From Fimbriosthenelais zetlandica (taxonomy: Eukaryota): a stretch of 64,000 nucleotides of DNA. A program made the translations under genes and the position numbers. Shown here in pieces: positions 2,921-58,640 of the stretch (within the stretch, counting starts at the first letter, position 1; each line of letters opens with the position of its first letter). The stretch covers positions 2,294,001-2,358,000 of the forward strand of contig OZ365116.1 of the NCBI GenBank assembly GCA_977030845.1, read 5' to 3'. Under the pieces are notes generated by a model that worked only from the letters and a program-made list of their open reading frames with translations, had not been told where the DNA came from and did not search any database.

Positions 2921-2955
2921 GTCAGGGGTATAATATAAACTATAGCTGTACTCAC

Positions 2956-3095
2956 TCTAGTGAAGCCACCTTGATGAGGGCCTTGGTGAGTAACATGGGC
3001 CATAACTCATGTTCTAGACGAGTAGCAGGGAGTAACATGTGACCATCATCATCATACGGTACCGTGTCATCTATGGTGATCTTCCTCCACCGTCC
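2956..3095 (-). CDS. ADGB: Androglobin exon (GRWRKITIDDTVPYDDDGHMLLPATRLEHELWPMLLTKALIKVASL)
   Basis: ttgtttgtAG acceptor, GA|GTGAGT donor, 140 nt. Confidence 0.95.
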
Positions 3096-6000
3096 CTACA
3101 AACAATCCATCATTAATTAATACATATTATTCTAAATAAATAACCTCCACCGTCCCTACAAACAATCCATCATTAATAATACATATTATTCTAAATAAAT
3201 AACCTCCACCGTCCCTACAAACAATCCATCATTAATACATATTATTATAAGTAAATAACATCAAAGAATTGATTTAAAAGTTTCCTGAGAATTCTGAACA
3301 GCATTTTATTGAGAAATGCTGTCTTTAGGCTAAATTATTTAAAATAAGTAACTGTTTTCAGTAGCTCATTACAGTCAGTTAGGGCAGTTGGTTTGAAACT
3401 CGGTTCACTGGGAAGTAATCAGATACAAGTCTAGGGTACTCATATAGAAACCTATCTAAACATGTGTTAAACAAACAATAAACTACTAAAAAAAATATAT
3501 AAAAAAAAATGTTCTTCAATTATCCGACCCCTTTTGCGGTAGTGGATAGAGAAAGAATTCCTACTCAAAATAAACTACTGACCATCCAGTAGAGTTTGAC
3601 GACGTATTTGCCGTGCGGGTTGTAGGCTGGCGTATTGGGGATCTTGACTTTATTAATGGCGTAGATATGCTCCCATGGACGCCACATGTACGCCATGTCT
3701 CCCTCTGTAGGTACGCCAGGATCCACGCCTTCTGCTGGCGTCTTCTCTTTACACATCTGCCACAGGGCGTAGATCTGGCTGGTGATCCAACGTAACAGCT
3801 GAAAATAACAGAAATATTGACCATTAATGTTTACATATCATCTCCCAGAACACGAAGTAAGTAGTAGAGAGAAAGAGCCCACATATCCATGCAGGCATCT
3901 GAAAGACATAGTAGTAGAGGGAAGAAGGCCACATCTCCAGGCAAATATATGAAAGTACATAGTCGTGGAGGGAAGTAGGCTGTATCTCAAGGCCAATATA
4001 AGAAAGTACATAGCAGTAGATGGAAGAAGGCCACATCTCCAGGCAAATATATGAAAGTACATAGTACTTAGTGGAGGGAAGTAGGCTGTATCTCAAGGCA
4101 AATATAAGAAAGTACATAGCAGTATAGGTAAGTAGGCCACTTCTCCAGGAAAATATAGTAGTATAGGGAAGTAGGCCCCATGTCCAGGAAAATATATGAA
4201 AACTTTTACATAGTAGTATATGGAAGTAGGCCCCACCTTCAGGCAAATATAGAAGTTTGTGAGAATGGTATGCACAGAGAAGTTATTGTGGATTTTCAGA
4301 CTATTTTTCAAGAACTCAGAAATCACCTCAATGGCACTCCTTTGTGTTAAGATCAGCCCTGAATGAGGCAGCAATAAGACAGACAGTAATAGACATGACA
4401 CAAGCCATGTGACCACAGGTTAATGACCCATTAAATGACATTTATGTGCCCCCCGCACCGCCCCCCGTCACTGCCCCGTGTGTGATGAACATTTAAATGA
4501 CACGTTGACCACAGGTAACCGCTACCATCACCACCAAGTACTTCACAGGTGACTTTAACGTTTAGTTCTCATCATGCTCCCTCCCCCCGTCACCATGTAG
4601 TGTCATGATGGGCCTTAATGGGCCTAATATCGCCCGCTCACAGTCCTGTCACATAATGGAGGGCCTGTCACATAATGGAGGGCCTGGGTTAAACGTCTGT
4701 CACCGTGACAGGAGCTATAAGGCAGGGTGATGATTCACTGTGAGAAGAACAACTGTCTTTGTCCTCCTTTAAGGCGTGTTACCAATATATAAAGGGGATC
4801 CTCCGCTCTTAAATGTCCAAGGCCTTAAGGCCGTCCTCCACTGTTACATGTTCCATTGCGACACAGCCAGCAATATCACAGCAGTGGATTACCGCTGTAT
4901 TATGTAGAATGATCTTTTTCTTGTTCAAATAAAAATACTCGAAAATTGGGCTTTAGGCAATTGCCCTATAGGTCGTATATAAAGTTTATGGCGAAATTGA
5001 ATTGGGTAAGAGTTCCCATTATTGTTCCCATTTATTTTTATGGAACAATTGAGAGCTAATCATTGAAGGTTCAAAATCATGAACTGGACCTCTATAGGGC
5101 CTGGGGCGGGATACATGTAGGGTGGGGTAGGAGTCGCTATAGGTGGGGCTGGGGTGGGGCTGGGGGTGACATTAATGACCTATCTCATGTAAATCGTGAC
5201 CAGTCCAGCCCGGTCCACCCGGGGCTATGAATGATGTTAATTTGTGTAGAGGTACAGTAACATTAGCTCACCTTTATGTGTGGACATTACCCAGCTAACT
5301 TTACACTGCCCGGCCCAGGCGGGGGCCCAGGCGGGGGCCCAGGCCACCATGTTCACATTGATAGCCACTGATAGCCACACTGATTGCCTGATCTTATATC
5401 AGTACTTCTCTATGACTTTACATTGTAATTATCTCACATGATTCATTACTAATCAGTCATAAGGTTTATCAAACTCTGTTTTCATATTACTGGGATGTTG
5501 AACAATACCTCGCTGGCTTTGTCCCCAGGCATGTTATAGAGGATTGGATTACTCAGAGCCTTGTCATTGTCAATTCAGGTGGTCAGGTCAAATAATATTT
5601 ATTATTGGGAAATTCCCTAAAATCCATTTGTACTGAAATGTCTGTCTTTTACATGCCTCTCACAAGACAGTAGGGGACATGGTTGGCCTTTTACATGCCT
5701 CTCACCACAGACAGTGGGAGACATGGCTGGTTGATGGCACAGTTAGCAACAGTGATGGCGGTATTGTTAAGATAACTGCCCGTTTAATCGGGCACATAGG
5801 GCATTATAATAGGGCATTATGATAGGGCATTATGAGGCAGTGGTTCTATGATAGGGCATTATAATAGGGCATTATGAGGACCATAATGCCCTCACATGAA
5901 GCAGGTAGACGACTCACATCAAAGCCTACCAGTGTCTGATCATGGTCACCTGGATGAAAGGTGCTCCAGGCCCTGCCCCATCTCCTCCCCCCCCCCCCCT

Positions 6001-9000: not shown

Positions 9001-12000
9001 AGACTCGGTTCAAATTGATGTAATATGTAGCTTACTTGAGATGTATGGAGACATGGAACATCACCAGGGATAGTTCCAAAGATAGGGGACACCATCAAGG
9101 ATAGTTCCCATTAAACATAAATTCATGGCAATATTTCTTGCTTTGTGATGTATCCTTTCTATACATGGTTTGTTCCTACAACTTGCGCTAAGACCCCACC
9201 CAGAAAATACCACAAAAAAACGAGCAGAGTGGAGGGAAGGAGAATAAAGATTGGGAGAATCTGGTATGGGAGATTGATGGCACTAGGCCTGTATATGTAC
9301 TGGTACATGGAGCCTATATGACATATAAAGTGGCAGGTAACAGTATATATGTTACCTGGATGTGACCACGTCCGGTAATCTATAAAGCGTCTTTTCATCT
9401 CTATATCCTCCTATACAGCAATCACTGCGGGAGATGGTCATAATACTGACTCAATATCCACTACATGACATACTCAAATCATACTCCATATTATCTTTAT
9501 TATTTCTTCAATAATTCCTGCATGTAACACTTCAAGAACGTGTGTTACAATGCATGGATATCGTGTGTTTAAATCATGATTTCTGCTGTTAATTTTCTCT
9601 AAAACCCTTTAAGGATGAAATCAGAAACAGGATCAGCTATTATAGCCTGGTTGGACGTCAAGTTCATAATGATAGGTGTCAGGTTACATGGGTATACTCC
9701 CTCTTAACTCTGCTACAGGGAGTACCCCATCATTATACCTCCTCTCCTCCCTCTCCATCATTATACCCCTTCTCCTCTCCTCCCTACTCCTCCCCTCTCC
9801 ATCATTACCTCTTCCCTTCTCCTCCCTACTCCTCCCCTCACCCAGCCTCAGGGCCCATCACAATACCTGGGATAGAGTGACGGGGTTATAATGTCAGGGT
9901 TGATAGTTATTCTGGTTAATTAAAGGTAAAACAATACCACACCTGGGGCGATGTACAGGTAGTGTTCTCACAGTGTCCAACACTGGGGGATCTAAGATCA
10001 GTCCTCAATACACCCTCCCTCACACCTGCCAGGTGGGCAAGCTCCGTACCCCACCCTGGTAGATTTGGCAGGGTATCCGTCATGGAGCACCAGGTGTACT
10101 GGTAAATGCGCGGGTGTGGGGTATCTGGCACTGTGCCTTGTCACCCGTGTCTGACCCTGTCTTTTGATACACATTTGGCAGATTCTGCTCATTTGGTTTT
10201 AGATAAAAACGTTCATAACGTGTTTATTCAGTAATTGTCTGTAATTACAATTACCGTCCTAAAATTAGATATAAGTACATCAGAGACATGACCTTGATAG
10301 CTTTGATATTGATTTGTATGGAAATATAAATGGAAATTCAGGAGCATTGGGAGAAGCTTTCAATATTAAAACGATGAAGTCTCTTTCTTGAAGTATAACC
10401 TAAAGAGAAACTTACAGAATGAATCAAATATAAAGGAGGGAATGTGAGCAGTTTTAAATCGAAAAGGGGGTTTTCATGAGGTGTAGAATGTATTGAGTAA
10501 GCTGGCAGGATTAGCCTTGTACTAGGTGACCTCCACACACCCTCACAGCCCCACCCTCACAACGACACAGACCAGGTAACGCCCAACACCACGACACACA
10601 GGTGTACAGGTAACGTCGTGACGTTAATGACGTCACCACCCAGCGTCACCTCGCCAGCTTAGCTTTCATTTCCGGGTCACACCTCTAGAGGTCATTGGAC
10701 CTGAGGCGGCATATGGTCAAACAACAATCAGTACACATGTAGCCTGAGGTCTGTTAGACTGACCACCCTGACCACCGGTCAACACGTGCTGACCACAACT
10801 AATCTACCTGCCAGGGTCAATATTCACTTACCTGACAACATAAATAGATTAGTGTACAATCAATTATAAATGATTGATTATTTTACATGAATATTAACAA
10901 AGTCAAAAATAAATATTGTGTGGGCATTTACAACTGTTTCCTGTCTAATACCAGAATATATAATATAATCCTAGGAAATTCTATTAAATATCTTAGTAAG
11001 AATATAGGATATTCAATGGGCTTATTGGCAATGGTATACTTGCAACTAAAATACATACATTTATATTGACACTTTAGCCCGGAAGAAGCTGTATACAACA
11101 TATAAGTGATATCATAATGTAGGCCTATACATGGAGGTACTATAATCTCCCCTATCCTCACCTGAAACTCATCTTTTTAAACCCTATACATGTATTTATA
11201 CTCGCCCCTATGTGGTAATTACCCTTCACTTATTACCCTGTATATATCTATAGCTTACCATGCTGTATCAGGGGGGCAGCCCCCCCCCCCCGGGCCCCAC
11301 CTCACACACATTCACCCATTGTGTCTATTTAAATATATATTTTACAGCTCTAGGACAGGGAGAAGTCATGTGACCCCAGACTCTCAGACTTTTAATCTCA
11401 TAGATAAGTTGATGGTTCATTGTGACCGAGTGATACAGACACGGTTCACTGGGCATGGCATTGTAGTGTGGTTTTATTTCTTTTCCTGGACAAAAACACT
11501 AATTTCCAGGTATATTTCAACGCCAACACTTTGTTGCAATGAAAATAATGTCTCAAGAATATTTGAGAATTTTACAGTAAATGAGTTAATAATATGTGTA
11601 CTCACTGGTCAGAGACGGGCGTCCTCTTTGATATCTGACATTGTCCTTCTCCCCCATTGTCCCCTGTTTTACACATTGTCACATTTGGTGGGTCTTTACT
11701 GCTATTTAATCTGCCTTCCTTATTGTCATCTTATTGTAATGACCTCCGGTTTCATTGTGGTTTCACACTATTTGAGATAAAGTTTCCATTAAAGCTGTTT
11801 TTCTGCTGGTAACAGAGGGTTTGAGTGGAGGGCATTGTATGGAGCCCCGTGAGGTCGGCCATACATCTTATCTCTGTACTCTACTCTCAGCTGGTGATAT
11901 ATAACCTATATCAACCCTCTCAGCGGGTTATCTATAACTTATATCAACCTGTATTCAAACTTGTATTCAGTCTGGTAATTGAATACACCTTTCATATTTA

Positions 12001-21000: not shown

Positions 21001-24000
21001 AAAAGCGTTATTTAGTTGTGAATGTGGTGGGATTAGACTTACCAACAGACACAGGATGGGGTTTGTTTAGGGTTGGAAGGTCAACGGGTGCCGAGGGGAA
21101 CAGAGAATAGAGTCAAAAGTGTCAAAAATCAGTTACACGACTTAAATTCTCATCAAATTAGTCCTCAGTTACACTTAACAATATTTAGATCATTATCAAA
21201 ATTAAAAGAAAATTTCCAAAATCCTCAAAAATTGCTACGATAAGAGAGAAGCTAGGGTATTGATAAGTTCATAGTTTATTATTTGAAGTGTTGTACGAGT
21301 TCTCTTGTATTTCTCACTGAAATAAGTTTGTCTTTGCCAATATCAAGTGATGTGGCCATTTATATAAGAGTGATGATATTTTTTTTACTTTTCTATTTGT
21401 TGAATAGAGAAGATCATGCTTTGTCCACAATATATTTCATGACAGTGTAGGCCCTGTATGAACAACAGTGATTATTTCTATATTATTTAAATTATATTTT
21501 CAAACTATTTATAATACAAAATTAAATAATTATACTTTCAATGTCAGGTCACATAAAGGGTAGACATGCACATTCATGAAAACATATATACACACAACTA
21601 GACATGCATTTATAAGGTGATTGTGGAGAATTCGATTCGAAATCCATGTTTAATCTTTAATATAATTGGAATAATGTACATTCACTGAGTGACGTTTGGT
21701 ATTAGTGTACTGATCACTGTAGCGAGGCATATTTGTATGGTACCAGTTTAAGCCTAGTTCTTTAGAAACTCTAGGGTCCTGGGTTCGAATCCCGGTCTGG
21801 ACACCAACACTATTTTTGTCACTCTGGATCATTACAGTTGAGGATTTTGTGTGAATATTGTGTGAATTATACATTCAAACTAAAGGGTTGTTAGGAGGGG
21901 AGGATCTGAGACTGAGGGATTTAGTAGCAAACGAGCACCACTTGCCTTCAATATATATACAACATACTCTAAAAATAACACAAGGATGTTTTAGAACGAG
22001 TCAAAATCATCAAAACATCAGATCTTTACATTCAGGTTCTCTATTAGACATACCATGGCTGTACCTTTTATATAGATATATAGATATATAGTTCCAATTT
22101 GATTTTTCTCATGACAACTATTGAAATGACTTAGTCCACTTACCACCGGGGATTTTCCCTTTTCCTTTTCCTTTCCTTTATGAGCCACATCCTGTAGAGA
22201 AAGATCAAGAAAGAAAGTTAAGAGATGAAGCCTGTGTCTGTACTATCAGTAATGTCTCACATCTAGATCTACTAATGGCTAACTATAATATAAACATGAA
22301 CTTTAGGCCATCATGATGAGCCACATCTCTCTCTCTCCAGGTCTCAATGTCCCTGTGATCATGATCACTCCATGAATAAATCACACTAATTGTTACCTCC
22401 ACTCCCACCTCTCACTCCTCATGGCTAAAAGACCACTTACCGGGACAGTTAGCCAAGGTATCTCCCAGACTCACTGGTGAAAACAGTGTAATACCATTAA
22501 ACCACCATCCCCTAAAGCGACCATCTCACTATGTGACCACTAAATTATCAGAACCAAATGTTTTAACACCACTAAGACATACTCACTAAAGCGACCATCT
22601 CACTATGTGACCACTAAATGACCAGAACCAAATGTTTTAATACCATTGAGACATACTCACTAAAGCGACCATGTCACTATGTGACCACTAATTGGTCAGA
22701 ACCAAATGTTTTAATACCACTAAATAACCAGGGCCACTACTTAGTCTACTAAGACATGCCCACTAAAGTGACCATCTTCAATAGATCTATACGACTACAA
22801 TTAGGTGAGTCTGCATGGATGGTCGCTTTAGAGAGAGCTAACTGTATGCTATATGTAAGGTGAGGTAAGTGAGGGGTTGACATGACTCGTCTGGTCGCTT
22901 TAGAGAGAGCTAACTGTATGCTATATGTAAGGTGAGGTAAGTGAGGGGTTGACATGGCTCGTCTGGTCGCTTTAGAGAAAGCTAACTGTATGCTATATGT
23001 AAGGTGAGGTAAGTGAGGGGTTGACATGGCTCGTCTGGTCGTTTTAGAGAGAGCTAACTGTATGCTATATGTAAGGTGAGTGGAGTGAGGGGTTGACATG
23101 GCTCGTCTGGTCGCTTTAGAGAGTGCTAACTGTATGCTATATGTAAGGTGAGGTAAGTGAGGGGTTGATATGGCTCGTCTGGTCGCTTTAGAGAGAGCTA
23201 ACTGTATGCTATATGTAAGGTGAGGTAAGTGAGAGGTTGACATGGCTCGTCTGGTCGCTTTAGAGAGAGCTAACTGTATGCTATATGTAAGGTGAGTGGA
23301 GTGAGGGGTTGACATGGCTCGTCTGGTCGTATTAATGGTGACCCATCTCATATAAATGACGCCTGTAGTTAGAAGCGTCAGGCTGGCGAGGCGCCTATAA
23401 AACACATCTAATGCTCTCAGGTTCACCTGATCATTCTACAGTCATTCCCCGCTAGTAATGCTCACTAATGTAATGCTTACTTCACACGAATCACCGACAA
23501 TCTCACATATAGTTCTAGCGACCAGAGAGAAAAGAGAAGCGGAGAGAAGTGGAGCGGGGGAAGAGGTAATGAGAGAGAGGAAAGCAAGAGAGAAGTGGGA
23601 TGGAGATAGAAAGAGTGAGATGCGAGAATGAGAGAGAGAATAAGCGAGTCTAGATGAGAGAATGGGAGAGAAAAATTAGAGAATGGGAGACACAAAACTG
23701 AAAAGAATGTGAGATAGAGAAGAAAATGGTAGAGGTCGAGAGAGGAGAAGGGGAAAGAGGAGAGAGAAGAGAATAAAAAAGAAGGCGGTCCCCATTTTCA
23801 GTCAGTGATAATAAGTGGTGGTGATGGAGTGAGGTTGGGATGACCACGGGCTATCTGATAGTCAGTAAATGTGGTGCTTGGTCAATTAGTGGTCAACATA
23901 AAGTCTGATTACCTGGGCCAGGTGTGTTATACCTAATATGTCCATCTCTCCCTCTCTCTCTCTCTCTAACTCCCCCCCCCCCTCTCTCTCTCTCTCTCCC

Positions 24001-26503
24001 TCCCTCCATCTCTCTCTCCCTCTCTCTAACTCTCTCTCTCTCCCTCTAACTCCCCCTCTCTCTCTCTCTCTCCCTCCCTCCATCTCTCTCTCCCTCTCTC
24101 TAACTCTCTCTCTCCCTCTAACTCCCCCCTCTCTCTCTCTCTGTCTCCCACTCTCTCTCTCTCTGTCTCTCTCTCTGACCGTCCCGCTCTACACTATAAT
24201 GTACATATACTAGTGACCACCATCTCTATAGCTTCATACACCGACCACCCACATACATGTACCGTCTGTCCCTATTACAAAAAACGCATGGATTTTGGAC
24301 GCGAATTTACACAGAACGCCAGACAAATTATATAATTAATTAATTCAAAAATGCTAGCCAATACTATATACCGGTATGTATAATACTATAATTATAACAC
24401 ATACTTTACATGCACTCTCACAGACAAATTACTGCAATGGGGCAAAGGCCCCCCTGGTTTTTTCACGAACCCTCGCATTTTTCATGGTAATGAATGGACG
24501 AACAATGATTTAATATATAAATTTATACTGGTTTAAACCATGTGGAAACTATAATATGGAGATTGTAATTTAGTAAATATAAGATATAAAATATTTCTCA
24601 CCCATTTCTCGGCGTTGACGTCCGCGTCGGACCAGTCCGGCCATATTACAAAGCGTGCAGTCTTCCTATCTCCTGTACCCACACTGGCCGCTATAGACGC
24701 CGCCCTGGTGAGTAAATCACGTACTATTAATACATTATACAGGGCCAGGAAGGGGCTTTACAGTAAGACAACAATTTAAGGTCATCTCAAAATGAATGCT
24801 GGACCTTAACAATCGATCACCCCGCCAATACTAGACGGAGAAACACGAGAGGACTTCTATGTAGATCCTTTCCTTAAATTATAGTTTTCTATAGACTTGA
24901 TTGTGCAAGTCTATGATTCTTTGATTTTGTTCAGTAATGAGACCTTTCCCATCTCGACTGAGGAATCAGACCATCCAGGGTAGATGGGAGGAGAAAGAGG
25001 GCTGATGTCACAGGGTCGAGCGCTCGTCTAAGTTGTCTAGTCTTTATAGTTTTCTTTAGAACTACAGTTTTTCTCTCCATCCGCGTCCGGTTTTCTCAAT
25101 TTGAACTATAATTTGCCCTCACACTTCTCAATTCCATATCTCTTTCTTCCCTGTCTACATCCCCCACAACCCAACCTCACCCCTACTCCAATATTAAATA
25201 TAATATTATTAACTTGGTAGACATTTTCTCCACTCTTGTATGATTAATATATGACCGAATTCCAACATCTAAAAACGACTTATTATAACAGTATATTTTA
25301 ATATGGCCATTGAAATAGTTGAAAAGCATGGGAATAATTGTACGCTCACACTTATTGTATAGAGGCCTTAATTAGCTTTAATTACGAGTATGCTCTATAT
25401 ACAGTGAGTGTTAACTTTACTGTAAGGCTCAGGCTTTAGTAAAGGCTTAGTCAGGCTTTACTCGTTGGTTTAAGTCCATTTACTACTAGTAACTAGCTAT
25501 CACAGTCAGCCAGAACTCCAGCAAAGCTAATAGAAACCTGTTACAAACAAATAATTTAATACTGTTAAGTTTATGCACTCACTGCCCTCTAGGCTCTAGA
25601 TCTAAAGACTGGTACGGTGCTTTATGAGATTAATTAGCTTCTAACTAAGCGAACATACATTAAAACAAAATAAAGGATATTATAGCTAAATATATTAATA
25701 CCTTTATGATTATTCTTAAAACATAGAAACCAGAGTCATATATTTTAGGGGACGAACATGGTTCTTATGGCATGATATTGACTTATTATACAATAATAAT
25801 AATTTTGTGGTATAGATACGGAATATTATATGTCCAAAAATATATAACGACAGTCGGACTTATTATATATATAGCCTAGATCCCTCTATTACTAGAGTCT
25901 ATTCACTGGTCAACACTTTTAATATGAATCATGTGAATGATTATGATCGATTATGAGTCACACACAATAATTTGTCCCTTTCAAGATTAAATAGTTAGAC
26001 TTAGAGGCTACACGTGCACATCACTCAGTAGGTCACAGATGGAATAATCTAAACCTATATAATTAGTAATGATACGTTTCTTGTTATAACTTGTATGGGG
26101 TCTACTAGCCGGTATAGGAGTAAGGCATGCCTAGCCTCTGCCACAACCAAAACAAAATAATAACAGATCATGCACCAAGAAGATAGCCACGCCCCCTTTT
26201 CTGGATCTCTCTTCCAGGGGCTCAGGCACCGGCAGCCAGACCTTTTAACGTATTATACTATTAAACGTAGGCAAAAACCTACTTATTTTCTGGGATACAT
26301 TTTCGGTTTAGTCTGATAAGCAAATTGAAGACTTGAGAAGGCTAACAAATAAACATGAGATCTATTATAGAGCGGGAATGGGCGCCATGTTTCTTGTTGC
26401 CATCCAAACGTAAACAAAAAGAGGGGCGTGGCACTTACTCTTTATTTGTGGCTGATCCTGCTCGGTTAGATGACTGGGTTTTCTTTGCCCCTTTAGAAGC
26501 CAT
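2956..26503 (-). CDS. ADGB: Androglobin gene, 5' portion (7 coding exons, N-terminal calpain-like domain); continues beyond window start
   Basis: Manual splicing of 26503-26439, 24704-24602, 22191-22144, 20159-20061, 19303-19226, 3798-3583 and 3095-2956 (all GT-AG, 749 nt in one frame) gives MASKGAKK...FVIWPDWSDADVNAEKW-DVAHKGKEKEKGKSPV-VQHFFDDPEGKVELPP...WKRPQDF...FDLLTPNE...LLRWITSQIYALW...WRPWEHIY...YNPHGKYVVKLYWM-GRWRKITIDD...ELWPMLLTKALIK. This is collinear with the vertebrate ADGB N-terminus as recalled (WPEW, HFFEDPEGKIELPP, WKRPQD, GKYVVKLYWMGCWRKITIDD, ELWPMLLSKAIIK). Confidence 0.95.
3084..3245. repeat. 59-60 bp x~3 tandem repeat including the ADGB splice acceptor
   Basis: CCTCCACCGTCCCTACAAACAATCCATCATTAA repeated three times. 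Confidence 0.95.
3583..3798 (-). CDS. ADGB: Androglobin exon (LLRWITSQIYALW...GKYVVKLYWM)
   Basis: gttattttcAG acceptor, ATG|GTCAGT donor, 216 nt; overlaps supplied ORF 3565..3756. Confidence 0.95.
3860..4255. repeat. Diverged minisatellite of about 50 bp
   Basis: GAAAGTACATAG..GAGGGAAG.AGGC...TCTCCAGGCAAATAT units. Confidence 0.8.
4815..4890 (-). mobile_element. Degenerate inverted remnant of the same MITE
   Basis: GTCCAAGGCCTTAAGGCCGTCCTCCA is the reverse complement of the MITE core; partial TIR (CAGCAGTGGA) follows. Confidence 0.55.
8571..8690. repeat. 40 bp x3 tandem repeat
   Basis: AGATCTCAATATAAGATGTTATGTGTGGGGCTGGCTTTGT. Confidence 0.9.
12001..12450. mobile_element. Same MITE family, internal units in opposite orientation
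   Basis: TA|CAGTAGGATCTTACTAAG left end; repeated GTGAGATGGTCGCTTTAGTGAG units. Confidence 0.55.
12692..12840. repeat. 23 bp x~6-7 minisatellite
   Basis: TACAGGTGTGACATT(A/C)ATGTCTG. Confidence 0.9.
14530..14647. mobile_element. Foldback (palindromic) element
   Basis: TAGACCCTTTGTTGGTT...CCCGTCTAGTGCGTA..TATACTC pairs with GAGTATATACGCACTAGACGGG...AACCAACAAAGGGTCTA around a GCGCGTGAGCGCG centre. Confidence 0.6.
16584..16790 (-). promoter_or_regulatory. Intronic promoter-like element with candidate non-coding exon
   Basis: Two minus-strand CCAAT boxes (16744, 16781), ETS ACTTCCGGT (16767), E-box CACGTG (16719), CpG-rich; TTG|GTGAGG donor at 16583. Confidence 0.4.
19226..19303 (-). CDS. ADGB: Androglobin exon (TPVIVDPDGMTKFDLLTPNEDVHESE)
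   Basis: ttttgtctccAG acceptor, GAG|GTGAGT donor, 78 nt. Confidence 0.93.
20061..20159 (-). CDS. ADGB: Androglobin exon (VQHFFDDPEGKVELPPSVRVDHWKRPQDFITEK)
   Basis: ttattAG acceptor, AAG|GTACGG donor, 99 nt. Confidence 0.95.
21740..21806 (+). pseudogene. Degenerate tRNA-like sequence / SINE head
   Basis: T-arm CTGGG-TTCGAAT-CCCGG (B box), 3' strand TCTGGACA followed by CCA; no recognisable D arm. Confidence 0.45.
22144..22191 (-). CDS. ADGB: Androglobin 48-nt exon (DVAHKGKEKEKGKSPV)
   Basis: ctttctctacAG acceptor, GTG|GTAAGT donor, phase 0-0. Confidence 0.9.
22484..22844. mobile_element. Same mariner-type MITE family
   Basis: Three internal GCGACCATCTCACTATGTGACCAC units; right end GGTCGCTTTAGAGAGAGCTAACTG|TA. 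Confidence 0.6.
22821..23330. repeat. 72 bp x7 minisatellite built from a MITE right end plus flank
   Basis: GGTCGCTTTAGAGAGAGCTAACTGTATGCTATATGTAAGGTGAGGTAAGTGAGGGGTTGACATGGCTCGTCT; explains spurious ORF 22749..23426. Confidence 0.95.
23520..24180. repeat. GA-rich and CT-rich low-complexity tracts
   Basis: (GA)n-like 23520-23790 and (CT)n-like 23945-24180. Confidence 0.85.
24602..24704 (-). CDS. ADGB: Androglobin coding exon (..ARFVIWPDWSDADVNAEKW)
   Basis: ctcaccAG acceptor, TGG|GTGAG donor, 103 nt; enters in phase 2. Confidence 0.92.
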
Positions 26504-26680
26504 ATCGGCGCGTTATCCGTGAGGTTTCTGATTAATGTGTCCCTGTCAGAGTGAGGGGACGGAGTGGTAAGTTGCTAAGTTAAGCAACTTAAGGACGCGG
26601 CTGGTCTCCACATGGGTAACACGCATGCGTCGTGAGTACACGCACCTGTCTCCAGGTGGCGCATGAGGTGCGGGGTAGTT
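26396..26680 (-). promoter_or_regulatory. ADGB proximal promoter/first-intron region with RFX-like, forkhead and NRF1-like motifs
   Basis: CpG-enriched. GTTGCTAAGTTAAGCAAC at 26571, ATGGGTAAC at 26612, CGCATGCG at 26622; GTTGCCATCCAAAC and GTAAACA at 26396-26416. Confidence 0.5.
26439..26503 (-). CDS. ADGB: Androglobin canonical first coding exon (MASKGAKKTQSSNRAGSATNK, phase-2 donor)
   Basis: ATG at 26503; AAAGA|GTAAGT donor at 26438; 65 nt; resembles the recalled vertebrate exon 1 (MASKQTKKK...KSKD). Confidence 0.85.
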
Positions 26681-27031
26681 AGTCTAAAGGCCGTCAGATG
26701 GCAGGGCAGGACGGGGAGGGGAGTTAATAGGAAAGGGATGTAGCCTAATGTTTCATTAATTTTTCAGATCCTAAAATAGCCTAGGGGGCCTTACTAAAAT
26801 AAAAAGATCAGGATAAGCCTATCTATTATAGGATCCTATCTAGGCCTAGGCTTTCTATGCCTAGGCCTTCTAGGCCTATAGGCTAGGCCTAAGCATAGGC
26901 ATAGCCTAATTATTAAAGGCAGAGGCATAGGCTATTGCTTGCGACACATTAAAAACATAGTTTCTGATATTTTAAGGAATTAATAAGTTAACCTCAGTAA
27001 ATATGGAATGATAATAAATTCCAGCCCTCAC

Positions 27032-27582
27032 CCTTTATATAGCTGTGCCTCTGTACAGAGTTTACTTCCATCACTGCCTCCATCCTTGCCCTCTACCCAT
27101 CCTCGTGTCACAGATAATCTCACCCCCTCCCCCGCCCCCACCACTGATGGGTACACCTCTACTGTCCTATAATACACATCGCCTTCTCTAGGCTGGTAGA
27201 GTTCTATAGACGGTTGAGAGTTCCTGGATGACGACCTGCCCCCACCCTGCCCACCCTCCCTCACGACACTCAGTCTCCGGGGTTTGAGTCCCTCATTCTG
27301 CCCACCTGCCGGTTGACCTTGTTTGACCTTGGTTTGACCGCTAGGTGAGGCTGTCGTTGAGTGTCTCCTGCCCCCTCCCCCCTCAGATACAGCCCCTCCT
27401 AAAGTGGCGGTGGAATGTTTCCTCCCCCCTCCCCCCTCAGACACGACCCCTCCTAAAGTGGCGGTGAAATGTTTCCTCCCCCCTCCCCCCTCAGATACAG
27501 CCCCTCCTAAAGTGACGGTGGAATGTCTTCTACCTGCTGATCCCTCTGATGGAGTGACACTCGATTGTCTCCTGGCACTCAT
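27032..27582 (-). CDS. Putative alternative 5' exon of androglobin (about 183 aa, disordered, 18-aa repeats)
   Basis: The ORF 27028..27582 stop lies inside AAAGG|GTGAGG, a phase-2 donor compatible with the 24704 acceptor. It contains 54-bp coding repeats (TxTLGGxVSEGGGGRKHS). Confidence 0.6.
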
Positions 27583-29360
27583 TTTAAAGTGAAAATCAAT
27601 CAGAATATGATTAGGCTACAGCCTTTAATCCTTGAGTACTCGAACTAAAAGTTACAGGATCTCAATTTAAGATATTTTACTTTATCAGTTCATTCTGAGA
27701 TATATTCTACCGTTATATCTATTCCTATGATCCTATGATCCCAACAAACGACTTAGCTCTTTCGCTACTTTCAATTTTTCCTCCAGACGTTATCCAATTA
27801 GTTAGTTACTTAATGTGTCCACACTCCCCTAGAAAATGTGACGTATTAAAATCCACATTACTGAGTCATTTCTAGGTACTGTTCTTCCATGCATGAACTT
27901 ATTTAAAATAATCCAGCTGGCTTAGAGAAACCTTGTGAAGACTTATCTAGAACTAGTATTTTAACTGAACTCTTATTGTTCTACCTTCACCTGAGATGGT
28001 GGGGTAGGCTACTAGTGATACTTCACCTTATTGATGGACTTAAGAAACCACCAGGTGGAACTAAAGGCTCACTCTCACTACACCCCACACCCACCCCTTT
28101 AACAGGCTAACTCCAGGCTAGCTGTGAATGTTAGTATTAAGTGTGTGGGGAGAGGGAGGAGTGTTTGTCCAGGTTGATGGAGTGGAGGGAGACCAGCTCA
28201 CTATCTCTAACTATTGTTGATGTTAGATCTACCATTAATGACTGATTTACATTGTGCCCACCACAAAATACCAGGTGAAGTGGACGGTCAATACTCTACT
28301 CATACACCATACACCACCTCTCTCCTATAAGTCTTCCCTAGGGGCATTCATTATCTTATCTCTCCCCAAGGACATAGGTGTTCCCCAAGGGAATTATTTT
28401 TCATTGAGATTATATGAGGGAAACCTCTTTTTATTTTATCTGATTTGTTTTCAACACTTTTCTTTCTTTCTCCCCACCTTTCTCTTTTAATACATAATTT
28501 ATTATGGGGTGATTTTTCATTCTGATAAGACCTCTCCAGGTAGTTCAATATGCATGTAACCCAACTATGGGACAAAGATAAAAAAATACATGCTGAATCG
28601 TATAGACTATAGAGCCTAATAGCGGCTGTAGATTGAATGGAGAAACAAGTAGGCCTATTGTTATTATTGACAGATATGGGTACATACTAATCGATGAGTT
28701 AGTAGAGTTATGTAATTGGTGTGAGGAGAGATCAGATCAATGTAACCAGGATGTAGATGTATACAGGTGGCTGGTAGAACACGTCACAACAAGTCATTAA
28801 AGCTAGACTAGCCACACACCCAGCTTTAACCACCATCTCCCCAGCTTGTCATCATACATTAATCCCATTTGATATACCAATACCAATATTTAGATATATA
28901 TAGTGACATTAAAATGGCGTACAATTTCATATAGAAAAGTATACTATCAGCATATTCTCTTCGGATATAGTTTTATATTTGGTTTAGCGATATTGAGTGT
29001 AGGGATATTCCCCCTCATGATTCTTTTAGGAATTATAAATGTATAGTGAATTTAAAAAAAGATGATGGTGAATTCTCACAGGGCCTGAGACCATAGGAAT
29101 TGTCCATGGCCTTATAATATCAGTACACACTGAATTCCTCCAGGGCATGGACGTTCCCAGAGGTAGGCCTAATAAAGGGGTTAGGGTTCCATCCTCTCTG
29201 CTGGAGGTTCACAATCTGATTCATGTGAGAAGTGACAGGGGCGCCACAAGCCGGACTAACACTAGCTCCATGTCGCCCTCTAGTAGACAACAGGGGAACT
29301 ATACTCAAAGTGCGATTTAAGTGGAGGTATAGAACTAGAGAGTTCTAGTATTAACGGACA

Positions 29361-29925
29361 TATAATAACTTATGTGTAGCTCCATCTAAAGCCTGTTTTG
29401 TGGAGGTATTAAAGGGACATATGGTAACTTAGTGTAGCCCCCTCTAGCGCATGTTTATGGAGGTATTAAAGGGACATATGGTCACTTACGTGTAGCTCCA
29501 TCTAGCGCCTGTTTTATGGAGGTATTAAAGGGAGATATGGTAACTTACGTGTAGCCCCCTCTAGCGCCTGTTTTGTGGAGGTATTAAAGGGACATATGGT
29601 CACTTACGTGTAGCTCCATCTAGCGCCTGTTTTATGGAGGTATTAAAGGGACATAGGGTAACTTAGTGTAGTCCCCTCTAGCGCCTATTTTATGGAGGTA
29701 TTAAAGGGACATAGGGTAACTTAGTGTAGTCCCCTCTAGCGCCTGTTTTGTGGAGGTATTAAAGGGACATATGGTAACTTACGTGTAACCCCCTCTAGCG
29801 CCTGTTTTGTGGAGGTATTAAAGGGACATATGGTAACTTACGTGTAGCCCCCTCTAGCGCCTGTTTTGTGGAGGTATTAAAGGGACATAGGGTAACTTAC
29901 GTGTAGCCCCCTTTACCGCCTGTTT
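29361..29925. repeat. 58-59 bp x~10 minisatellite containing an exon end and 5' splice site
   Basis: GGTAACTTACGTGTAGCCCCCTCTAGCGCCTGTTTTGTGGAGGTATTAAAGGGACATAT units abut and overlap the 29901 exon end. Confidence 0.95.
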
Positions 29926-30776
29926 TGCCTAGAGATGACTCACGACCCAGTCTACTGGGCCCCGTCCTGGCCGCCGTGACGTCATCACGCTGATGACCCA
30001 GGCGGCTCGTCATCTGACTCGTCATCCGTCCGCTCTCCACCTTACTTCCCTCTACTTCACCTCTACTTCCTCTCCTCACTTTCTCATGTTCCTCGCTTGT
30101 CTCAAAGCTGCCTTTTCTGGACGACGAGTCGCTATCAGTGGATCCCTGTTTCTGTGTCGCTAACTTTCTCCATCTGTCCACTGAACCTCCACCGCCATCT
30201 GAACCATTACTCGCTGCTTTATTGTCGCTCCCATTACTATTTGTTCTTATAATGGCAGGAAGGGGAATCAATGTTGGATCTTTATTGTCGGTGCCATTAC
30301 TATCTGTTCTTGTAATGGCAGGAAGGGGAATCAATGTTGGATCTTTATTGTCGGTGCCATTACTATCTGTTCTTGTAATGGCAGGAAGGGGAATCAATGT
30401 TGGATCTTTATTGTCGGTGCCATTACTACCTGTTCTTGTAATGGCAGGAAGGGGGATCAATGTTGGATCTTGTAATGATCCATCACCTACATTCTGTCCG
30501 TCAGTACCAGTTTTATCATTGAGCACGTTGTGTTGGGTGGGTTGACGCTCTGGTTGTGAATCCTCGCGTCCATCTATTGGTAGTTTGGATGTCTCAGCAG
30601 GCACACTGCCCTCACCTGGCCGCCTTGATTCAGTAATCGCCGGTAGGGAGGGGTGTGTAGGTGTGATCCTGGTCACGTGTACATCAGGTGAAGGTGTTGG
30701 TGATTCCTCCAGTACCTCCAGGCTGGGTAAGAATGGTTTAGCCATCCTCTCCTGAGGCGAGATGACAACTCTCGTC
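29901..30776 (-). CDS. Putative upstream exon of androglobin long isoform (ATG at 30745; disordered, 21-aa repeats)
   Basis: ttttAG acceptor at 30777; TACAC|GTAAGT phase-2 donor at 29900; 876 nt open frame (multiple of 3); four 63-bp repeats (DPTLIPLPAITRTDSNGTDNK). Confidence 0.65.
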
Positions 30777-30780
30777 CTAA

Positions 30781-30930
30781 AATCACCAATATATGTATCC
30801 CCGATATATCTCCGATATATGGCAGGCTTGATGCAAACTTAAATCACCAATATCTCAGATATATGACAGGCTTGATGCAAACTAAAATCTCCAATATCTC
30901 AGATATATGACAGGCTTGATGCAAACTTAA
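30781..30930. repeat. About 43 bp x3 tandem repeat upstream of the 30776 acceptor
   Basis: AATCACCAATATCTCAGATATATGACAGGCTTGATGCAAACTTA. Confidence 0.8.
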
Positions 30931-32887
30931 ATGGCCTCAAAAGCAAGACATGTGTCATTCATTCATTCCCTTATGAGACATATCACGATTTGAAAAAGAA
31001 CTTATAAATGATCCATTTAGCCTACTGAGAAATTCACAGATTTTGAATCCTTCCCATGCAAGACATAACAAAATCATGCGTGTGCAAATAATACATTCAT
31101 GTTTGTGGCCGACCTGGGTCTTATATACATGTGTTGATAAACATACCCATGTAAAGTGAGTTTGATTTGAAATTGTGAGTTCTCAGTTGAGATGCGGAGT
31201 CAGATGTAATCCATTTAATATTCGTTGAAACGTAGCTGAAGATGGAGCCTTTACCACGATGTAAGCTCATGCAAAGTACATTCTATAACCGTATAAGTTG
31301 CTGTATACTTTATGTCAGTTGAAACTTGAAACATGATATAATGAAGACATGCAGTGTATGTGAGAGCAGCCCTAGTCCAATCATCAACTCACATCTCTAT
31401 GGACTTAGTTTCTTGCAATTTCTTGCGTCTGTTGAACTTCCCGTACATTCTTCTACTTCTAAGGCCTGCTGTAGCGTCTAATACTTACTTCTCCATGGGA
31501 TAAAATGATACCAAAAATTATTAAATCATCCAAAATATCCCGATACTGGTGTTATGATATTTGCTTGCGGAGTAATTTCCATGTAGGGTATGTTACAATC
31601 CTATAGTTAAACTTTGGTAATCCAATATGAAGTGAAGTCAGTGTGGGATGCTGGTTTGATTGCTATGTCACGCTTGCCTTATTAGCTGCTACACGTATAG
31701 TTAGTGTACTAGAGTTGGCTGGTAGAACCAGACTGCAGCCTCGGGAGGTTTAGGGAGGCTGGGAGGTGAATGGCATGTAAGTATGTGGTGATGTGTGTGT
31801 TATTGAGTGGTAGGATGAGCTGGGTCCCGGGGGGTCCCGGGGGTCCCGGGGGTCCCGGGGGGTCACTCACACTGGTACATACTAATCATACACATCCACG
31901 CTCCATTCATTATAAAGGGGTTGAATCCATGCAGGTGCATGGGTCCCTATATCAGAAAAGTAGCCCCTATATCAGAAAGGTAGATGGGGCCATTGGGGGC
32001 CCGGCCAGAATCCCCTCTGTGTCCATCCAACGAGAGTAAAATAAAGCTTTATTTCCATCAGAAAGATTGGTGGGAACAGGGCCAGGACTCCATCTATTAG
32101 AGATGGTTGTTATGTCGCTTAAATGTTTAAGCTGAACCGCAGCCCTTACGTCTACTTTCCCCCATCCCACCCCAATTTGGCAACCTTCTTATACAGAAAA
32201 ACATCAGTTAACTTGAAATTCAAAAAAAATACCGGGGTTGCCACCCCCGCCCCGATCACCCCAACTTTACACATCCTAGATCTACCCCTGATTACGTAAT
32301 CCTCCCTCCCACCCTACGCTAATCCACCCACCTCCTAATCCCGCTAAACCCGTCCATCTCATGATAATCCAGGCTGCTCCTGGCCCATACTAAAGCCGCT
32401 ATAGATTCATATAATCCCTCAAATATTTACCAAATAAATTCACCAAACATTTTGAGAGGGAAATACCCTTCCTGATTCAGTAAATATGTATTTAGAGAAC
32501 TTAGAATCTTTACTCCAGCAATAGGACGAAGCAAATAGCAACAGGGGAAGTTCAATTGTCTATATTTCTTACAATTCATGATGCAGGATAAAATCACATT
32601 CTACCTACCTCTTACCTCCCCCACTTTTTATAACTAGTTTAGGCCATGTTTTTCTTCAAATAGCTTTGTAGCTGGAATGTTAGCAGTTGTAGTTTTAAAT
32701 AATTGAACTCCTTTAATGGAGGTTATCTAAAGATATTGATTTTTTCAAAAGCTGTTTCGATTAGTACCGGATTGAATTGATCCCCAGGTGTAGAGAGGGA
32801 CCCCCGGCTTTGTTTAATATCATGATAAGGTTAGTTAGACCATATGGTAGGTGGCGGCTTGGTGGCGTGCTACGACAACAAGTGTTT

Positions 32888-51503: not shown

Positions 51504-52745
51504 TTACTTACAGTATAATAGGGAGATAGAGGGACAGGGACAGGGGATAGAGAGTGGGACAGGGAATGACAGTGACAGAGGAATAGAAAGAGAGATAGAG
51601 AATGACAGAGAAGGACAGACGCACAGTGTTATAGAGGGACAGGGATAGGGACTATCCGACAGGGATAACAATCGTTTAATAAAAGTTGAGCATTCAGAAT
51701 AGAAAGTGGGACTTGGTCATGGATCAAGTCTGACATCAGGGTATAGTGTCGTGATTACTGATCTCTCAACATAGCTGCAGGGCGCTCTGTTTCACAAAGA
51801 TGCGCTACATTCACTTATAGACCTATTATTGCCTAAAAGTCGTTATGAAACGCTCCCTAATGCATAAAAATAACGAGATAATCATGTGAAATATAAATCA
51901 TTTAAAACAGTCAGTAGAAATGATGACTGTTGAGCTGTGACTTTGTGTCAGACTACTCCAGTATCTATATATCATACGTCGGCGTATGTATCATTGTTTC
52001 TAGTCAGCTTATCAAAGTTTACTTTAGGATGAGAAAAAATGGATAAACTTGGAAATAAGAGGTCAGGCAGTGTAGACATACGCACATGCTGACCACTGAG
52101 TGTGTGTGTGTGTGTGTGTGTGAGGGGGGGTGGGTGGGGGGGGGGGGGTGATTGTGAACCAGGATCTAGTCCGAGCTTTCACCATCAAGATGGATAATCT
52201 TTCTAGAACATTCTTTAATACTTCTGTTGAATGAAGAATGCATGTTTCCCATATTCCATTACCAACTACTAAGCAATTACTGCGATTATATTATAGAAAG
52301 ATATTGGAAATTAGACGACTATTTTTATGCTGCATGTATTTGCGTGGGGGCATGTAAGGTTCTGGACTTCTTGGAATCATTTTAGAAATTGAATGTACTT
52401 TTAGTTTCATGGTAAAGTGTGGTTAAGCCATGTTTGTGAGCCGTGCCTCCTTCTATGTCAGGGTCAGACCTATAATTCATTATATTCCCTCATACAGCTG
52501 ATGGTTTACATATGTGAGGGCAGGCATGCATTATATCGTAGTTTGTAGGCCACTTTTACAAGGAATAGCCCCCCTCTGAGGAATAATTTCAATAATTGAC
52601 ATTTTAAGTTCAACTATATTATCTAGGCTACACATATCGGCCTTTGTAAGTAGGATCACATTTCAATCTAAGATTAGACACGACTGATAAACATTTTTTG
52701 ATAATTTTTGTTGTAAATTCTTTCAGATTTAAAGTGACAATCAAC

Positions 52746-57809: not shown

Positions 57810-58039
57810 CATCATGATTGTCTAAAATTCTAAGATATGAAAAGCAAACTCGGCGAGTGCACTCTGGTATGAATATGTAGGTAGAAGATAAGACTATGAG
57901 ATTGGATACAGTCATAAAGGCTCTGGTATCATCCTCTATGTTTTATGGGTAATAACTGTATTTGATAGTAGATGGTATGGTGGACACAGCGCCCCCGTGT
58001 CTGGAGGCAAAACTACAGACACGATCTCTACAGGGGGGG

Positions 58040-58640
58040 GGGGAGGGTTTGGGACGTAGAGAAAGGGAGATGGAGAGGAGGGATTGGGAGGTAGAGAAGG
58101 GGAGATGGAGAGGAGGGATTGGGAGGTAGAGAAGGGGAGATGGAGAGGAGGGATTGGGAGGTAGAGAAGGGGAGATGGAGAGGAGGGATTGGGAGGTAGA
58201 GAAAGGGAGATGGAGAGGAGGGATTGGGAGGTAGAGAAGGGGAGATGGAGAGGAGGGATTGGGACGTTGAGAAGGGGGGTGGAGGAGATTAAGGATGGGA
58301 AAGGGAGGTAGAGAGAGGGAGATGGGGAGGAAGGGTTTGGGAGGTAGAGAAAGGGAGATGGGGAGACGAGGATTGGGAGGTAGAGAAGGGGGATGGGGAG
58401 GAGGGGATTGGGAAAGAGAAAGAGAAGAGGAGAGATGGGGAGGAAGGGGACGTAGAGAAGGGGAGATGGAGAGGAGGGGATTGGGAGGTAGAGAAGGGGG
58501 ATGGAGGTTAAGGATGCGAAAAAGAAAGAGAAGAGGAGAGATGGGAGGAAGGGTCTGGGAAGGAGTGAGACTCGGAGATGAGGAATTACAGGAGGAAGGA
58601 AGGGGACAGAGGAAGAGAAAGGATGGAAGAGGCGGAATGG
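58040..58640. repeat. Purine-rich 35-bp minisatellite decaying into GA-rich low complexity
   Basis: GAGAAGGGGAGATGGAGAGGAGGGATTGGGAGGTA units; source of spurious ORFs 57943..58755 and 58295..58708. Confidence 0.9.

What the first reader, a model, noticed from the sequence alone, without database searches (positions are those of the whole stretch)
27032..30776. Androglobin with two giant upstream phase-2 exons: unrecognised long N-terminal isoforms
Seen: besides the canonical MASK exon (26503-26439), two long open exons upstream end in strong phase-2 donors (29900 GTAAGT; 27031 GTGAGG), exactly the phase needed for the 24704 acceptor. Exon A (876 nt) has a ttttAG acceptor. Exon B either starts at its own ATG or uses a rare GAG acceptor (27577; 546 nt, also a multiple of 3). 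Both encode Ser/Gly/Arg-rich disordered sequence with internal repeats. Established: ADGB is a calpain-globin-IQ chimera of ciliated and sperm cells, usually modelled with a short first exon. Inference: alternative promoters add about 180, 280 or up to about 470 aa of disordered N-terminus.
Basis: partly seen in the sequence, partly recalled or inferred. Interest (0 to 1): 0.7.

Follow-up and report, generated by a model that had tools for sequence, protein, structure and literature searches.

The report
Conserved disordered-protein exons upstream of androglobin
Just upstream of the androglobin gene lies a real protein-coding unit shared with a related species, which could either add a long floppy front end to androglobin or be a separate small gene; no RNA data were available to decide.

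Summary
Both ORFs and their splice-like sites are at the stated coordinates on the minus strand. Exon A (30776-29901) is a genuine coding exon. One related species (Logan contigs L001/L002) has an ortholog with conserved N- and C-terminal blocks, saturated synonymous change against low non-synonymous change, and the same G|GTAAGT donor in the same phase.

Exon A is not a first exon. A conserved 56-nt mini-exon E0 (ATG 31448 to 31393, donor GTGAGT) joins the AG 31 nt upstream of the "MAK" ATG, in frame, in both species.

Exon B (27577/27571-27032) has no detectable homolog. Its frame is open beyond chance even with the 54-nt repeat collapsed (p about 0.002-0.006). Its stop sits inside an 8.8-bit donor-like site, which holds for only 1.3% of stop triplets in the window.

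Every combination E0/A/B to ADGB exon 2 (24704) is in frame. No transcript evidence could be obtained. No protein in 1.84 billion representatives carries exon A fused to a longer protein.

My odds: about 50% that this unit is an upstream-promoter 5' module of ADGB, and about 35% that it is a separate upstream gene ending at B's TGA.

The parts
31393..31448 (-). E0: conserved coding mini-exon. ATG at 31448-31446, 56 coding nt, donor GTGAGT at 31392. It is the probable first exon of the unit.
   Evidence: A collinear tblastx hit to L001 5996-6061, the alignment and the sequences. In both species there are 56 nt from ATG to GTGAGT. Identity is 41/62 against 13-20/60 in the flanks. pS is 0.87 and pN 0.15 over the first 12 codons.
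29901..30776 (-). Exon A: 876 nt, phase 2 at both ends. Acceptor ttttAG at 30778-30777, internal 'MAK' ATG at 30745, donor GTAAGT at 29900.
   Evidence: Ortholog P0001 on L001/L002. pS/pN is 0.73/0.02 for the N-terminal block and 0.69/0.22 for the C-terminal block. An AG lies exactly 31 nt upstream of the ATG in both species. The G|GTAAGT hexamer is conserved.
30217..30471 (-). 63-nt (21-aa) in-frame tandem repeat, 4 copies, inside exon A (DPTLIPLPAITRT...). It is absent from the ortholog.
   Evidence: TRF and alignment A1.
29348..29927 (-). 59-nt x 9.9 minisatellite. Its first unit is the last 27 nt of exon A plus the donor. Later copies carry further GTAAGT sites, which are unusable because an in-frame TAA comes first.
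   Evidence: TRF and the sequence. No array follows the donor in L001.
27032..27577 (-). Exon B (candidate). Acceptor at 27577 (GAG|T) or 27571 (CAG|G), own ATG at 27582, donor-like AGG|GTGAGG at 27031, which overlaps the stop TGA at 27030-27028.
   Evidence: No homolog was found.
27362..27526 (-). 54-nt (18-aa) in-frame tandem repeat inside exon B carrying R-R/K-H-S-T motifs.
   Evidence: TRF and the motif count.
26439..26503 (-). Canonical ADGB exon 1 coding part (MASKGAKKTQSSNRAGSATNKE). There is an in-frame TAA 4 codons upstream of the ATG.
   Evidence: Sequence, donor score, translation.
24602..24704 (-). ADGB exon 2 (AASIAASVGTGDRKTARFVIWPDWSDADVNAEKW). It is the shared phase-2 acceptor for all the proposed joins.
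   Evidence: Sequence and in-frame models.
2955..3095 (-). Downstream calpain-domain exon of the same gene (GRWRKITIDD...ELWPMLLTKALIK).
   Evidence: Pfam PF00648 Peptidase_C2, 24.7 bits against a cut-off of 23.8.

Best explanation
A lineage-restricted, fast-evolving coding unit for a disordered protein lies head-to-tail upstream of androglobin.

**Anatomy**
- It starts at a conserved mini-exon, E0 (31448-31393, peptide MYGKFNRRKKLQETKSIE).
- It continues into exon A (30776-29901).
- It probably continues into exon B (27577 or 27571 to 27032).
- Every junction leaves a 2-nt overhang, the same phase as ADGB intron 1.

**Proposed mechanism**
- Transcripts that start near 31.5 kb skip the canonical MASK exon and its promoter, which then lie inside the last intron.
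- They join ADGB exon 2 at 24704.
- This replaces the 22-aa canonical N-terminus with about 311 aa (E0-A) or about 491-493 aa (E0-A-B) of disordered, Ser/Thr/Gly/Arg-rich sequence.
- The B part carries five R-R/K-x-S/T motifs that resemble basophilic-kinase (PKA-type) sites.

**Shown:** E0 and A are real coding exons under purifying selection, with conserved splice sites, and all joins are in frame.

**Inferred:** that B is an exon, and that the unit is spliced to ADGB.
For: **Exon A is a real coding exon with a real donor**
- Its ortholog is P0001 (218 aa) on Logan contigs L001/L002. Residues 1-39 are 67% identical, and a 49-column C-terminal block is 57% identical.
- Synonymous sites are saturated (pS about 0.7). 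pN is 0.02 over the first 20 codons and 0.22 over the C-terminal 44 codons.
- Both ORFs end in G|GTAAGT at the same codon phase, although the flanking sequence is unrelated.

**E0 is a conserved coding mini-exon that joins A**
- It lies in a collinear position in both species, 56 nt from ATG to GTGAGT in each.
- It joins the AG 31 nt upstream of the MAK ATG in frame in both species.

**Exon B looks like an exon with a donor**
- Its frame is open with p about 0.003. With the repeat collapsed, p is 0.002 for that frame and 0.006 for any frame.
- Its stop lies in an 8.8-bit donor-like site. Only 99 of 7822 stop triplets in the window (1.3%) reach 8 bits in that register.
- Two AG acceptors at its 5' end are in phase with A's donor.

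**Consistent with a link to ADGB**
- There is no AATAAA or ATTAAA between B's stop and ADGB exon 1.
- All of E0-A-ex2, E0-A-B-ex2, E0-ex2 and B-ex2 translate without a stop into ...FVIWPDWSDADVNAEKW.
- The downstream gene is calpain-family. From my memory of the human protein, its exon peptides match ADGB.
Against: **No transcript or protein evidence**
- A profile of exon A against 1.84 billion representatives found no longer protein that contains it. It found only the stand-alone ORF P0001 and an unrelated repeat protein.

**Exon B is weakly supported**
- No homolog of B was found.
- Nothing B-like lies in the 1.39 kb that L001 holds downstream of exon A.
- The codon-usage score for B (+0.09 to +0.16 per codon) is no better than that of an antisense frame in the same place (+0.12).

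**The coincidences are weaker than they look**
- A stop preceded by G always gives a phase-2 GT.
- The match to ADGB's intron-1 phase has a 1-in-3 chance.

**Other points**
- The androglobin papers I read do not mention N-terminal isoforms. Sea urchin has two isoforms, of 1765 and 1841 aa, but the paper does not say where they differ.
Confidence: 0.5

Rival explanations
1. E0-A-B is a separate upstream gene. It is an independent three-exon gene for a roughly 493-aa disordered protein that ends at the TGA at 27030-27028 and is polyadenylated in the 0.5 kb before the ADGB promoter. The donor-like context of the stop and the shared phase with ADGB are coincidences.
For: - The unit has its own conserved start exon and an in-frame stop.
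- No database protein fuses exon A to anything longer.
- The canonical MASK exon has its own ATG, with an in-frame TAA upstream of it.
- Weak poly(A) variants such as AATGAA and AATAAT occur between 27030 and 26600.
- Tandem genes on the same strand are common.
Against: - Only 1.3% of stop triplets in the window sit in a donor-like site of 8 bits or more.
- The phase match with ADGB has a 1-in-3 chance.
- There is no canonical poly(A) hexamer in the 525 nt after the stop.
Confidence: 0.33
2. Exon B is not an exon. It is a G-rich minisatellite-bearing stretch upstream of the ADGB promoter that is open by chance. Exon A's donor joins something else: ADGB exon 2 directly, or an unrecognised small terminal exon, for example near the poly(A) hexamer cluster at 28435-28503.
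For: - B has no homolog.
- One third of B is a 54-nt repeat.
- T is only 17% of its bases, so stops are rare.
- A 225-aa pure-repeat ORF exists in an ADGB intron.
- The codon score does not discriminate sense from antisense.
- AATAAA and ATTAAA cluster at 28503, 28491 and 28435.
Against: - With the repeat collapsed, the frame still has 0 stops against 9 and 9 in the other frames, p = 0.002-0.006.
- In-phase acceptors and a strong donor-like site bracket the ORF exactly.
- A fourth, diverged repeat copy keeps R-R-H-S-T through three third-position changes.
Confidence: 0.2
3. The unit makes non-productive read-through transcripts. Upstream transcripts splice into the pyrimidine-rich acceptor-like site at 26542, just 5' of the MASK ATG, so that the E0-A(-B) ORF runs out of frame through exon 1 and stops in exon 2. 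That would make a conjoined or regulatory transcript, not a fusion protein.
For: The site ctccgtcccctcactctgacAG|G at 26542 has 16 of 20 pyrimidines and is open for 58 codons in the incoming phase. The 104-nt exon it creates shifts the frame, giving a TAG early in exon 2 (read).
Against: The site may simply be promoter sequence. Nothing shows that it is used, and it would waste a conserved coding unit.
Confidence: 0.07

Closest known systems
Canonical androglobin (ADGB) gene model, as in human and mouse: a short first coding exon followed by the calpain-like, permuted-globin and IQ regions
   Same: The window has the short MASK first exon, the conserved W-P-D/E-W-S motif exon, and a calpain-domain exon on the same strand.
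   Different: Here up to three extra phase-2 coding exons lie 0.5-5 kb upstream and could replace the first 22 aa. The androglobin papers I read mention nothing like this.
Alternative-promoter N-terminal isoforms in general, where an upstream first exon is spliced to a common exon 2 and skips the proximal promoter and exon 1
   Same: The geometry and reading frames fit exactly.
   Different: Use of the joins is unproven. The added part is unusually long (311-493 aa) and is taxonomically restricted.
Taxonomically restricted ('orphan') genes for intrinsically disordered proteins, and conjoined or read-through gene pairs
   Same: Only one ortholog was found in 1.84 billion representatives. The termini are conserved and the middle is free to diverge and to expand by repeats.
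   Different: The last coding exon's stop sits inside a strong donor-like site, in the phase of the next gene's exon 2.

Membership tests
5' coding exons / N-terminal isoform of ADGB | The downstream gene on the same strand is androglobin. | tested here: met
   A calpain-family exon at 2955-3095 scores above the Pfam cut-off. The exon peptides MASK......WPDWSDADVNAEKW, FFDDPEGKVELPPS...WKRPQDF and GKYVVKLYWM/GRWRKITIDD match human ADGB as I remember it, which is memory and not a tool result. The globin and IQ part lies outside the window.
5' coding exons / N-terminal isoform of ADGB | mRNA molecules join the exon to ADGB exon 2. | not testable with these tools
This genome is absent from the contig collection.
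5' coding exons / N-terminal isoform of ADGB | The reading frame is continuous across the proposed joins. | tested here: met
   All six ADGB-joined models, including the canonical exon 1-exon 2 join, translate without a stop into exon 2.
5' coding exons / N-terminal isoform of ADGB | A homologous extension is present on a longer (ADGB-length) protein somewhere in the databases. | tested here: not met
   The profile search of 1.84 billion representatives returned only the 218-aa stand-alone ORF and an unrelated 194-aa repeat protein. Caveat: isoforms can be hidden inside 50% identity clusters.
Real protein-coding exon (A and E0) | Purifying selection acts on the frame and the splice sites are conserved in another species. 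| tested here: met
   pS is about 0.7-0.87 against pN of 0.02-0.22. The acceptor at -31, the donor GTAAGT and E0's donor GTGAGT are all conserved.
Real protein-coding exon (B) | Conservation, or coding statistics beyond chance. | tested here: inconclusive
   No homolog was found. Openness has p = 0.002-0.006. The codon score is not discriminating.
Independent upstream gene | It has its own start exon, its own stop, and its own poly(A) signal before the next promoter. | tested here: inconclusive
   The start exon E0 and the stop TGA at 27030 are present. There is no AATAAA or ATTAAA between 27028 and 26503, only weak variants.
Chance ORF held open by an in-frame tandem repeat | The ORF is explained by the repeat unit alone, with no conservation. 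| tested here: not met
   Not met for A, whose conserved ends lie outside the repeat. Not met for B either, though less firmly: with the repeat collapsed it is still open, p = 0.002-0.006, but B has no conservation to back this up. The true example of this class is 22749-23426.

The most novel reading that the evidence does not exclude
In this animal lineage, androglobin is also made from a promoter about 5 kb upstream. The resulting isoform has the 22-aa N-terminus replaced by a disordered module of about 310-490 aa (E0-A-B). That module evolves by in-frame minisatellite expansion and carries a cluster of PKA-type R-R/K-x-S/T sites. This would give the cilia and sperm protein a lineage-specific, phospho-regulated front end.
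Probability: 0.4. Interest if true: 0.55.

Novelty: new variant of a known kind. Interest (0 to 1): 0.4.

Why it matters
Androglobin is a conserved, single-copy protein of cilia and sperm flagella whose regulation is poorly understood.

**If the upstream unit is spliced to it:** this lineage would provide a natural long N-terminal isoform with clustered kinase-site motifs. It would also be a clear case of new coding exons, built partly by in-frame minisatellites, being recruited to an ancient gene through phase-compatible splicing.

**If it is a separate gene:** it is an ordinary, taxonomically restricted gene for a disordered protein. The lesson is then methodological, because an ORF whose stop follows a G mimics a phase-2 donor.

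Either way, gene models here should include the E0 mini-exon, and they should not treat exon A as a first exon.

Tried and rejected
**RNA and reads**

**Homolog and contig searches**
- Exon B against the 5.8-billion-protein set: nothing.
- The 294-aa neighbouring ORF, tried to find annotated relatives and synteny: nothing.
- Exact look-ups of ORF A, ORF B, the 294-aa ORF and the 1561-aa ORF: not on record, so this genome is not in the collection.
- Metagenome scan with the exon A profile: 227 pattern matches, none confirmed.
- Profile hit P0002: a horseshoe-crab-assembly (the organism is my recollection of the accession GCA_000517525.1) protein with 21-aa repeats (IPYPRVGRTS...). I rejected it as a repeat-driven chance match, because it has no shared termini and comes from a different phylum.
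- tblastx and tblastn of B and of 24500-29900 against the 1.39 kb downstream of exon A in L001: only noise.
- Dispersed copies of the 26.5-31 kb region within the window: none.

**Family, RNA-family and motif searches**
- Pfam on A and B: nothing, apart from a meaningless 10-bit Ebola_NP match.
- Rfam on the window: nothing.
- ESM Atlas with B: best score 0.61, uninformative.
- X-box (RFX) motifs upstream of E0, of ADGB exon 1 and of E0 in L001: none.

**Alternative model and literature**
- A conserved CCTCAG|G 6 nt before the MAK ATG was considered as the acceptor. I rejected it because it breaks the frame from E0, and because its conservation is explained by the codons P-Q.
- Literature: the androglobin papers I read do not mention N-terminal isoforms. 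Hoogewijs 2012 is not held. A peptide-string search found nothing.
Full report
**1. What is in the sequence**

The gene reads on the minus strand. Searches confirm two long ORFs upstream of the short first coding exon:
- ORF A: 30745-29897, 282 aa from the ATG, open from 30838.
- ORF B: 27582-27028, 184 aa.

The canonical exons are:
- Exon 1: MASKGAKKTQSSNRAGSATNKE, 26503-26439.
- Exon 2: 24704-24602, ...FVIWPDWSDADVNAEKW.

- A ends CAC|GTAAGT, with its last base at 29901.
- B ends AGG|GTGAGG, with its last base at 27032.
- Exon 1 ends AGA|GTAAGT.
- All three leave two bases of a codon, and exon 2 supplies the third.

Tandem Repeats Finder shows:
- a 63-nt x 4 repeat inside A;
- a 54-nt x 3.1 repeat inside B;
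- a 59-nt x 9.9 minisatellite (29348-29927) whose first unit is the last 27 nt of exon A plus its donor.

A downstream exon on the same strand (2955-3095) passes the Pfam calpain threshold. Other exon peptides match human androglobin as I remember it. That part of the ADGB call rests on memory, not on a tool result.

**2. Is it more than chance?**

For A, yes, clearly. Its frame has 0 stops against 34 and 14 in the other two frames, and no composition-matched simulation was fully open.

For B, the frame has 0 stops against 11 and 11 (p about 0.003). With two of the three repeat copies removed it still has 0 against 9 and 9, giving p = 0.002 for that frame and 0.006 for any frame.

Three cautions apply:
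- A 225-aa ORF made purely of an 87-nt repeat lies in an ADGB intron (22749-23426).
- My codon-usage score, trained on the window's two large ORFs, scores B's frame (+0.09 to +0.16 per codon) no better than an antisense frame in the same place (+0.12).
- Any ORF whose stop follows a G yields a 'phase-2' GT automatically.

Even so, only 99 of 7822 stop triplets in the window (1.3%) sit in a donor-like site of 8 bits or more in that register. B's site scores 8.8 and A's scores 7.8.

**3. Exon A is a real, conserved coding exon**

The 5.8-billion-protein search gave one hit, P0001 (218 aa). It is encoded on Logan contigs L001 (8.7 kb) and L002, from the runs ERR14368248 and ERR14368245.

Conservation at the protein level:
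- It starts MAKQFLPSLEVLEESPTPSP, against MAKPFLPSLEVLEESPTPSP here.
- It ends ...SRLGQARDRDFMTSRMGPSRLGGRESTMSKHGGRGGLA, against ...SRLGHQRDDVTAARTGPSRLGRESSLGKTGGKGGYT here.
- The middle is unalignable and lacks the 63-nt repeat.

Selection on the frame:
- Synonymous sites are saturated, with pS about 0.7.
- pN is 0.02 over the first 20 codons and 0.22 over the C-terminal 44 codons.
- This is selection on this reading frame.

The ORF of the relative also ends ...GCG|TAAGT, that is G|GTAAGT in the same phase, although the sequence on both sides is unrelated. At this divergence, conservation of the whole hexamer argues for a functional donor and not merely a stop codon.

**4. New: exon A is not the first exon**

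A whole-window tblastx against L001 gave one further collinear match about 700 nt upstream of exon A in both species. It resolves as follows:
- Window: ATG 31448 ... last base 31393, then GTGAGT.
- L001: ATG 5999 ... 6054, then GTGAGT.
- Both are exactly 56 nt, 41/62 identical, with flanks at random level.
- The peptides are MYGKFNRRKKLQETKSIE and MYSKYNRRKILRGMMGIE.
- pS is 0.87 and pN 0.15 over the first 12 codons.

This donor leaves two bases. Both species have an AG exactly 31 nt upstream of the MAK ATG (ttttAG|G here, ttacAG|G in L001). Joining E0 to that acceptor is in frame in both species.

This explains two things. The ten codons before 'MAK' share R, P-Q and R with synonymous differences. 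The unit therefore begins near 31.45-31.5 kb, and the 'MAK' ATG is internal.

**5. Exon B**

- No homolog was found. Nothing similar lies in the 1.39 kb that L001 extends beyond exon A. In the window, B lies 2.3 kb beyond A, so this is not informative.
- B carries five R-R/K-x-S/T motifs, namely RRQS, RRHS, RKHS, RRHS and RRLS.
- A diverged fourth repeat copy keeps R-R-H-S-T through three third-position changes.

I rate B as probably coding, about 0.75-0.8, but unproven.

**6. Does the unit belong to ADGB?**

All of E0-A-ex2, E0-A-B-ex2, E0-ex2 and B(ATG)-ex2 translate cleanly into exon 2. They would replace 22 aa by about 311, 491-493, 19 or 184 aa respectively.

Points for a link:
- A's donor is functional and needs a partner.
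- B's stop lies in a strong donor-like site (1.3% class).
- The phases match ADGB intron 1.
- No AATAAA or ATTAAA lies between B's stop and exon 1.

Points against:
- A profile of exon A found no longer protein carrying it among 1.84 billion representatives.
- The phase match is a 1-in-3 event, and the locus was picked because of these coincidences.
- The androglobin papers I read do not mention N-terminal isoforms. Sea urchin has two isoforms of 1765 and 1841 aa, but the paper does not say where they differ.

A separate three-exon gene that ends at TGA 27030 is a serious rival. A further possibility is non-productive splicing into the pyrimidine-rich site at 26542, which would shift the frame and stop in exon 2.

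**7. Verdict**

- My odds are about 0.5 for an ADGB 5' module, about 0.33 for a separate gene, and the remainder for the other models.
- It would be a new variant of a known kind (alternative-promoter N-terminal isoform) or an ordinary orphan gene.
- Interest is moderate.

Noticed in passing
window 29348-29927 (-): The 59-nt minisatellite copies the last 27 nt of exon A, its GTAAGT donor and 26 nt of intron about ten times. The related species has no array after the homologous donor (L001 7342 onward), so the expansion is lineage-specific. Using any later donor copy would read through the in-frame TAA.
   Followed up: partly
window 30806-30932 (-): A 44-nt x 2.9 tandem repeat lies immediately upstream of exon A and duplicates the acceptor context (gattttag). 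Both splice sites of exon A therefore abut minisatellites that copy them.
   Followed up: no
window 22749-23426 (-): A 225-aa ORF inside an ADGB intron consists entirely of an 87-nt (29-aa) tandem repeat (...ATRRAMSTPHLPHLTYSIQLALSK...). It is a local example of a long ORF kept open only by an in-frame repeat.
   Followed up: partly
window about 31490-31482 (-); L001 about 5957-5965: A 9-mer, AAGTAAGTA, is conserved about 35-45 nt upstream of the E0 ATG in both species, in otherwise unalignable sequence. It could be a start-site or promoter element, or a donor of a further upstream leader.
   Followed up: no
window 26542 (-): A strong acceptor-like site, ctccgtcccctcactctgacAG|G, lies 39 nt upstream of the canonical MASK ATG. 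If upstream transcripts used it, the frame would shift and stop in exon 2.
   Followed up: partly
L003 (NCBI GCA_000517525.1, KI895029.1 244310-270415): P0002 is a 194-aa protein with 21-aa repeats (EDKRQDVIPYPRVGRTSWNLT). It looks like a multi-copy amidated-peptide precursor. It matched exon A's 21-aa repeats (LIPLPAITRT) at E = 5.5e-9, which I judge to be a repeat-amplified chance match.
   Followed up: partly
window 24009-24176: A long (TC)n / (GA)n tract lies in ADGB intron 2 and gives spurious ORFs rich in Ser/Leu/Pro on one strand and Arg/Glu on the other.
   Followed up: no
window 52698-53963 (+), 57943-58755 (-), 62623-63297 (+), 11190-11780 (+): Further ORFs of 196-421 aa elsewhere in the window were not examined. 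The one at 57.9-58.8 kb lies in the G-rich, strongly skewed kilobase seen in the composition profile.
   Followed up: no
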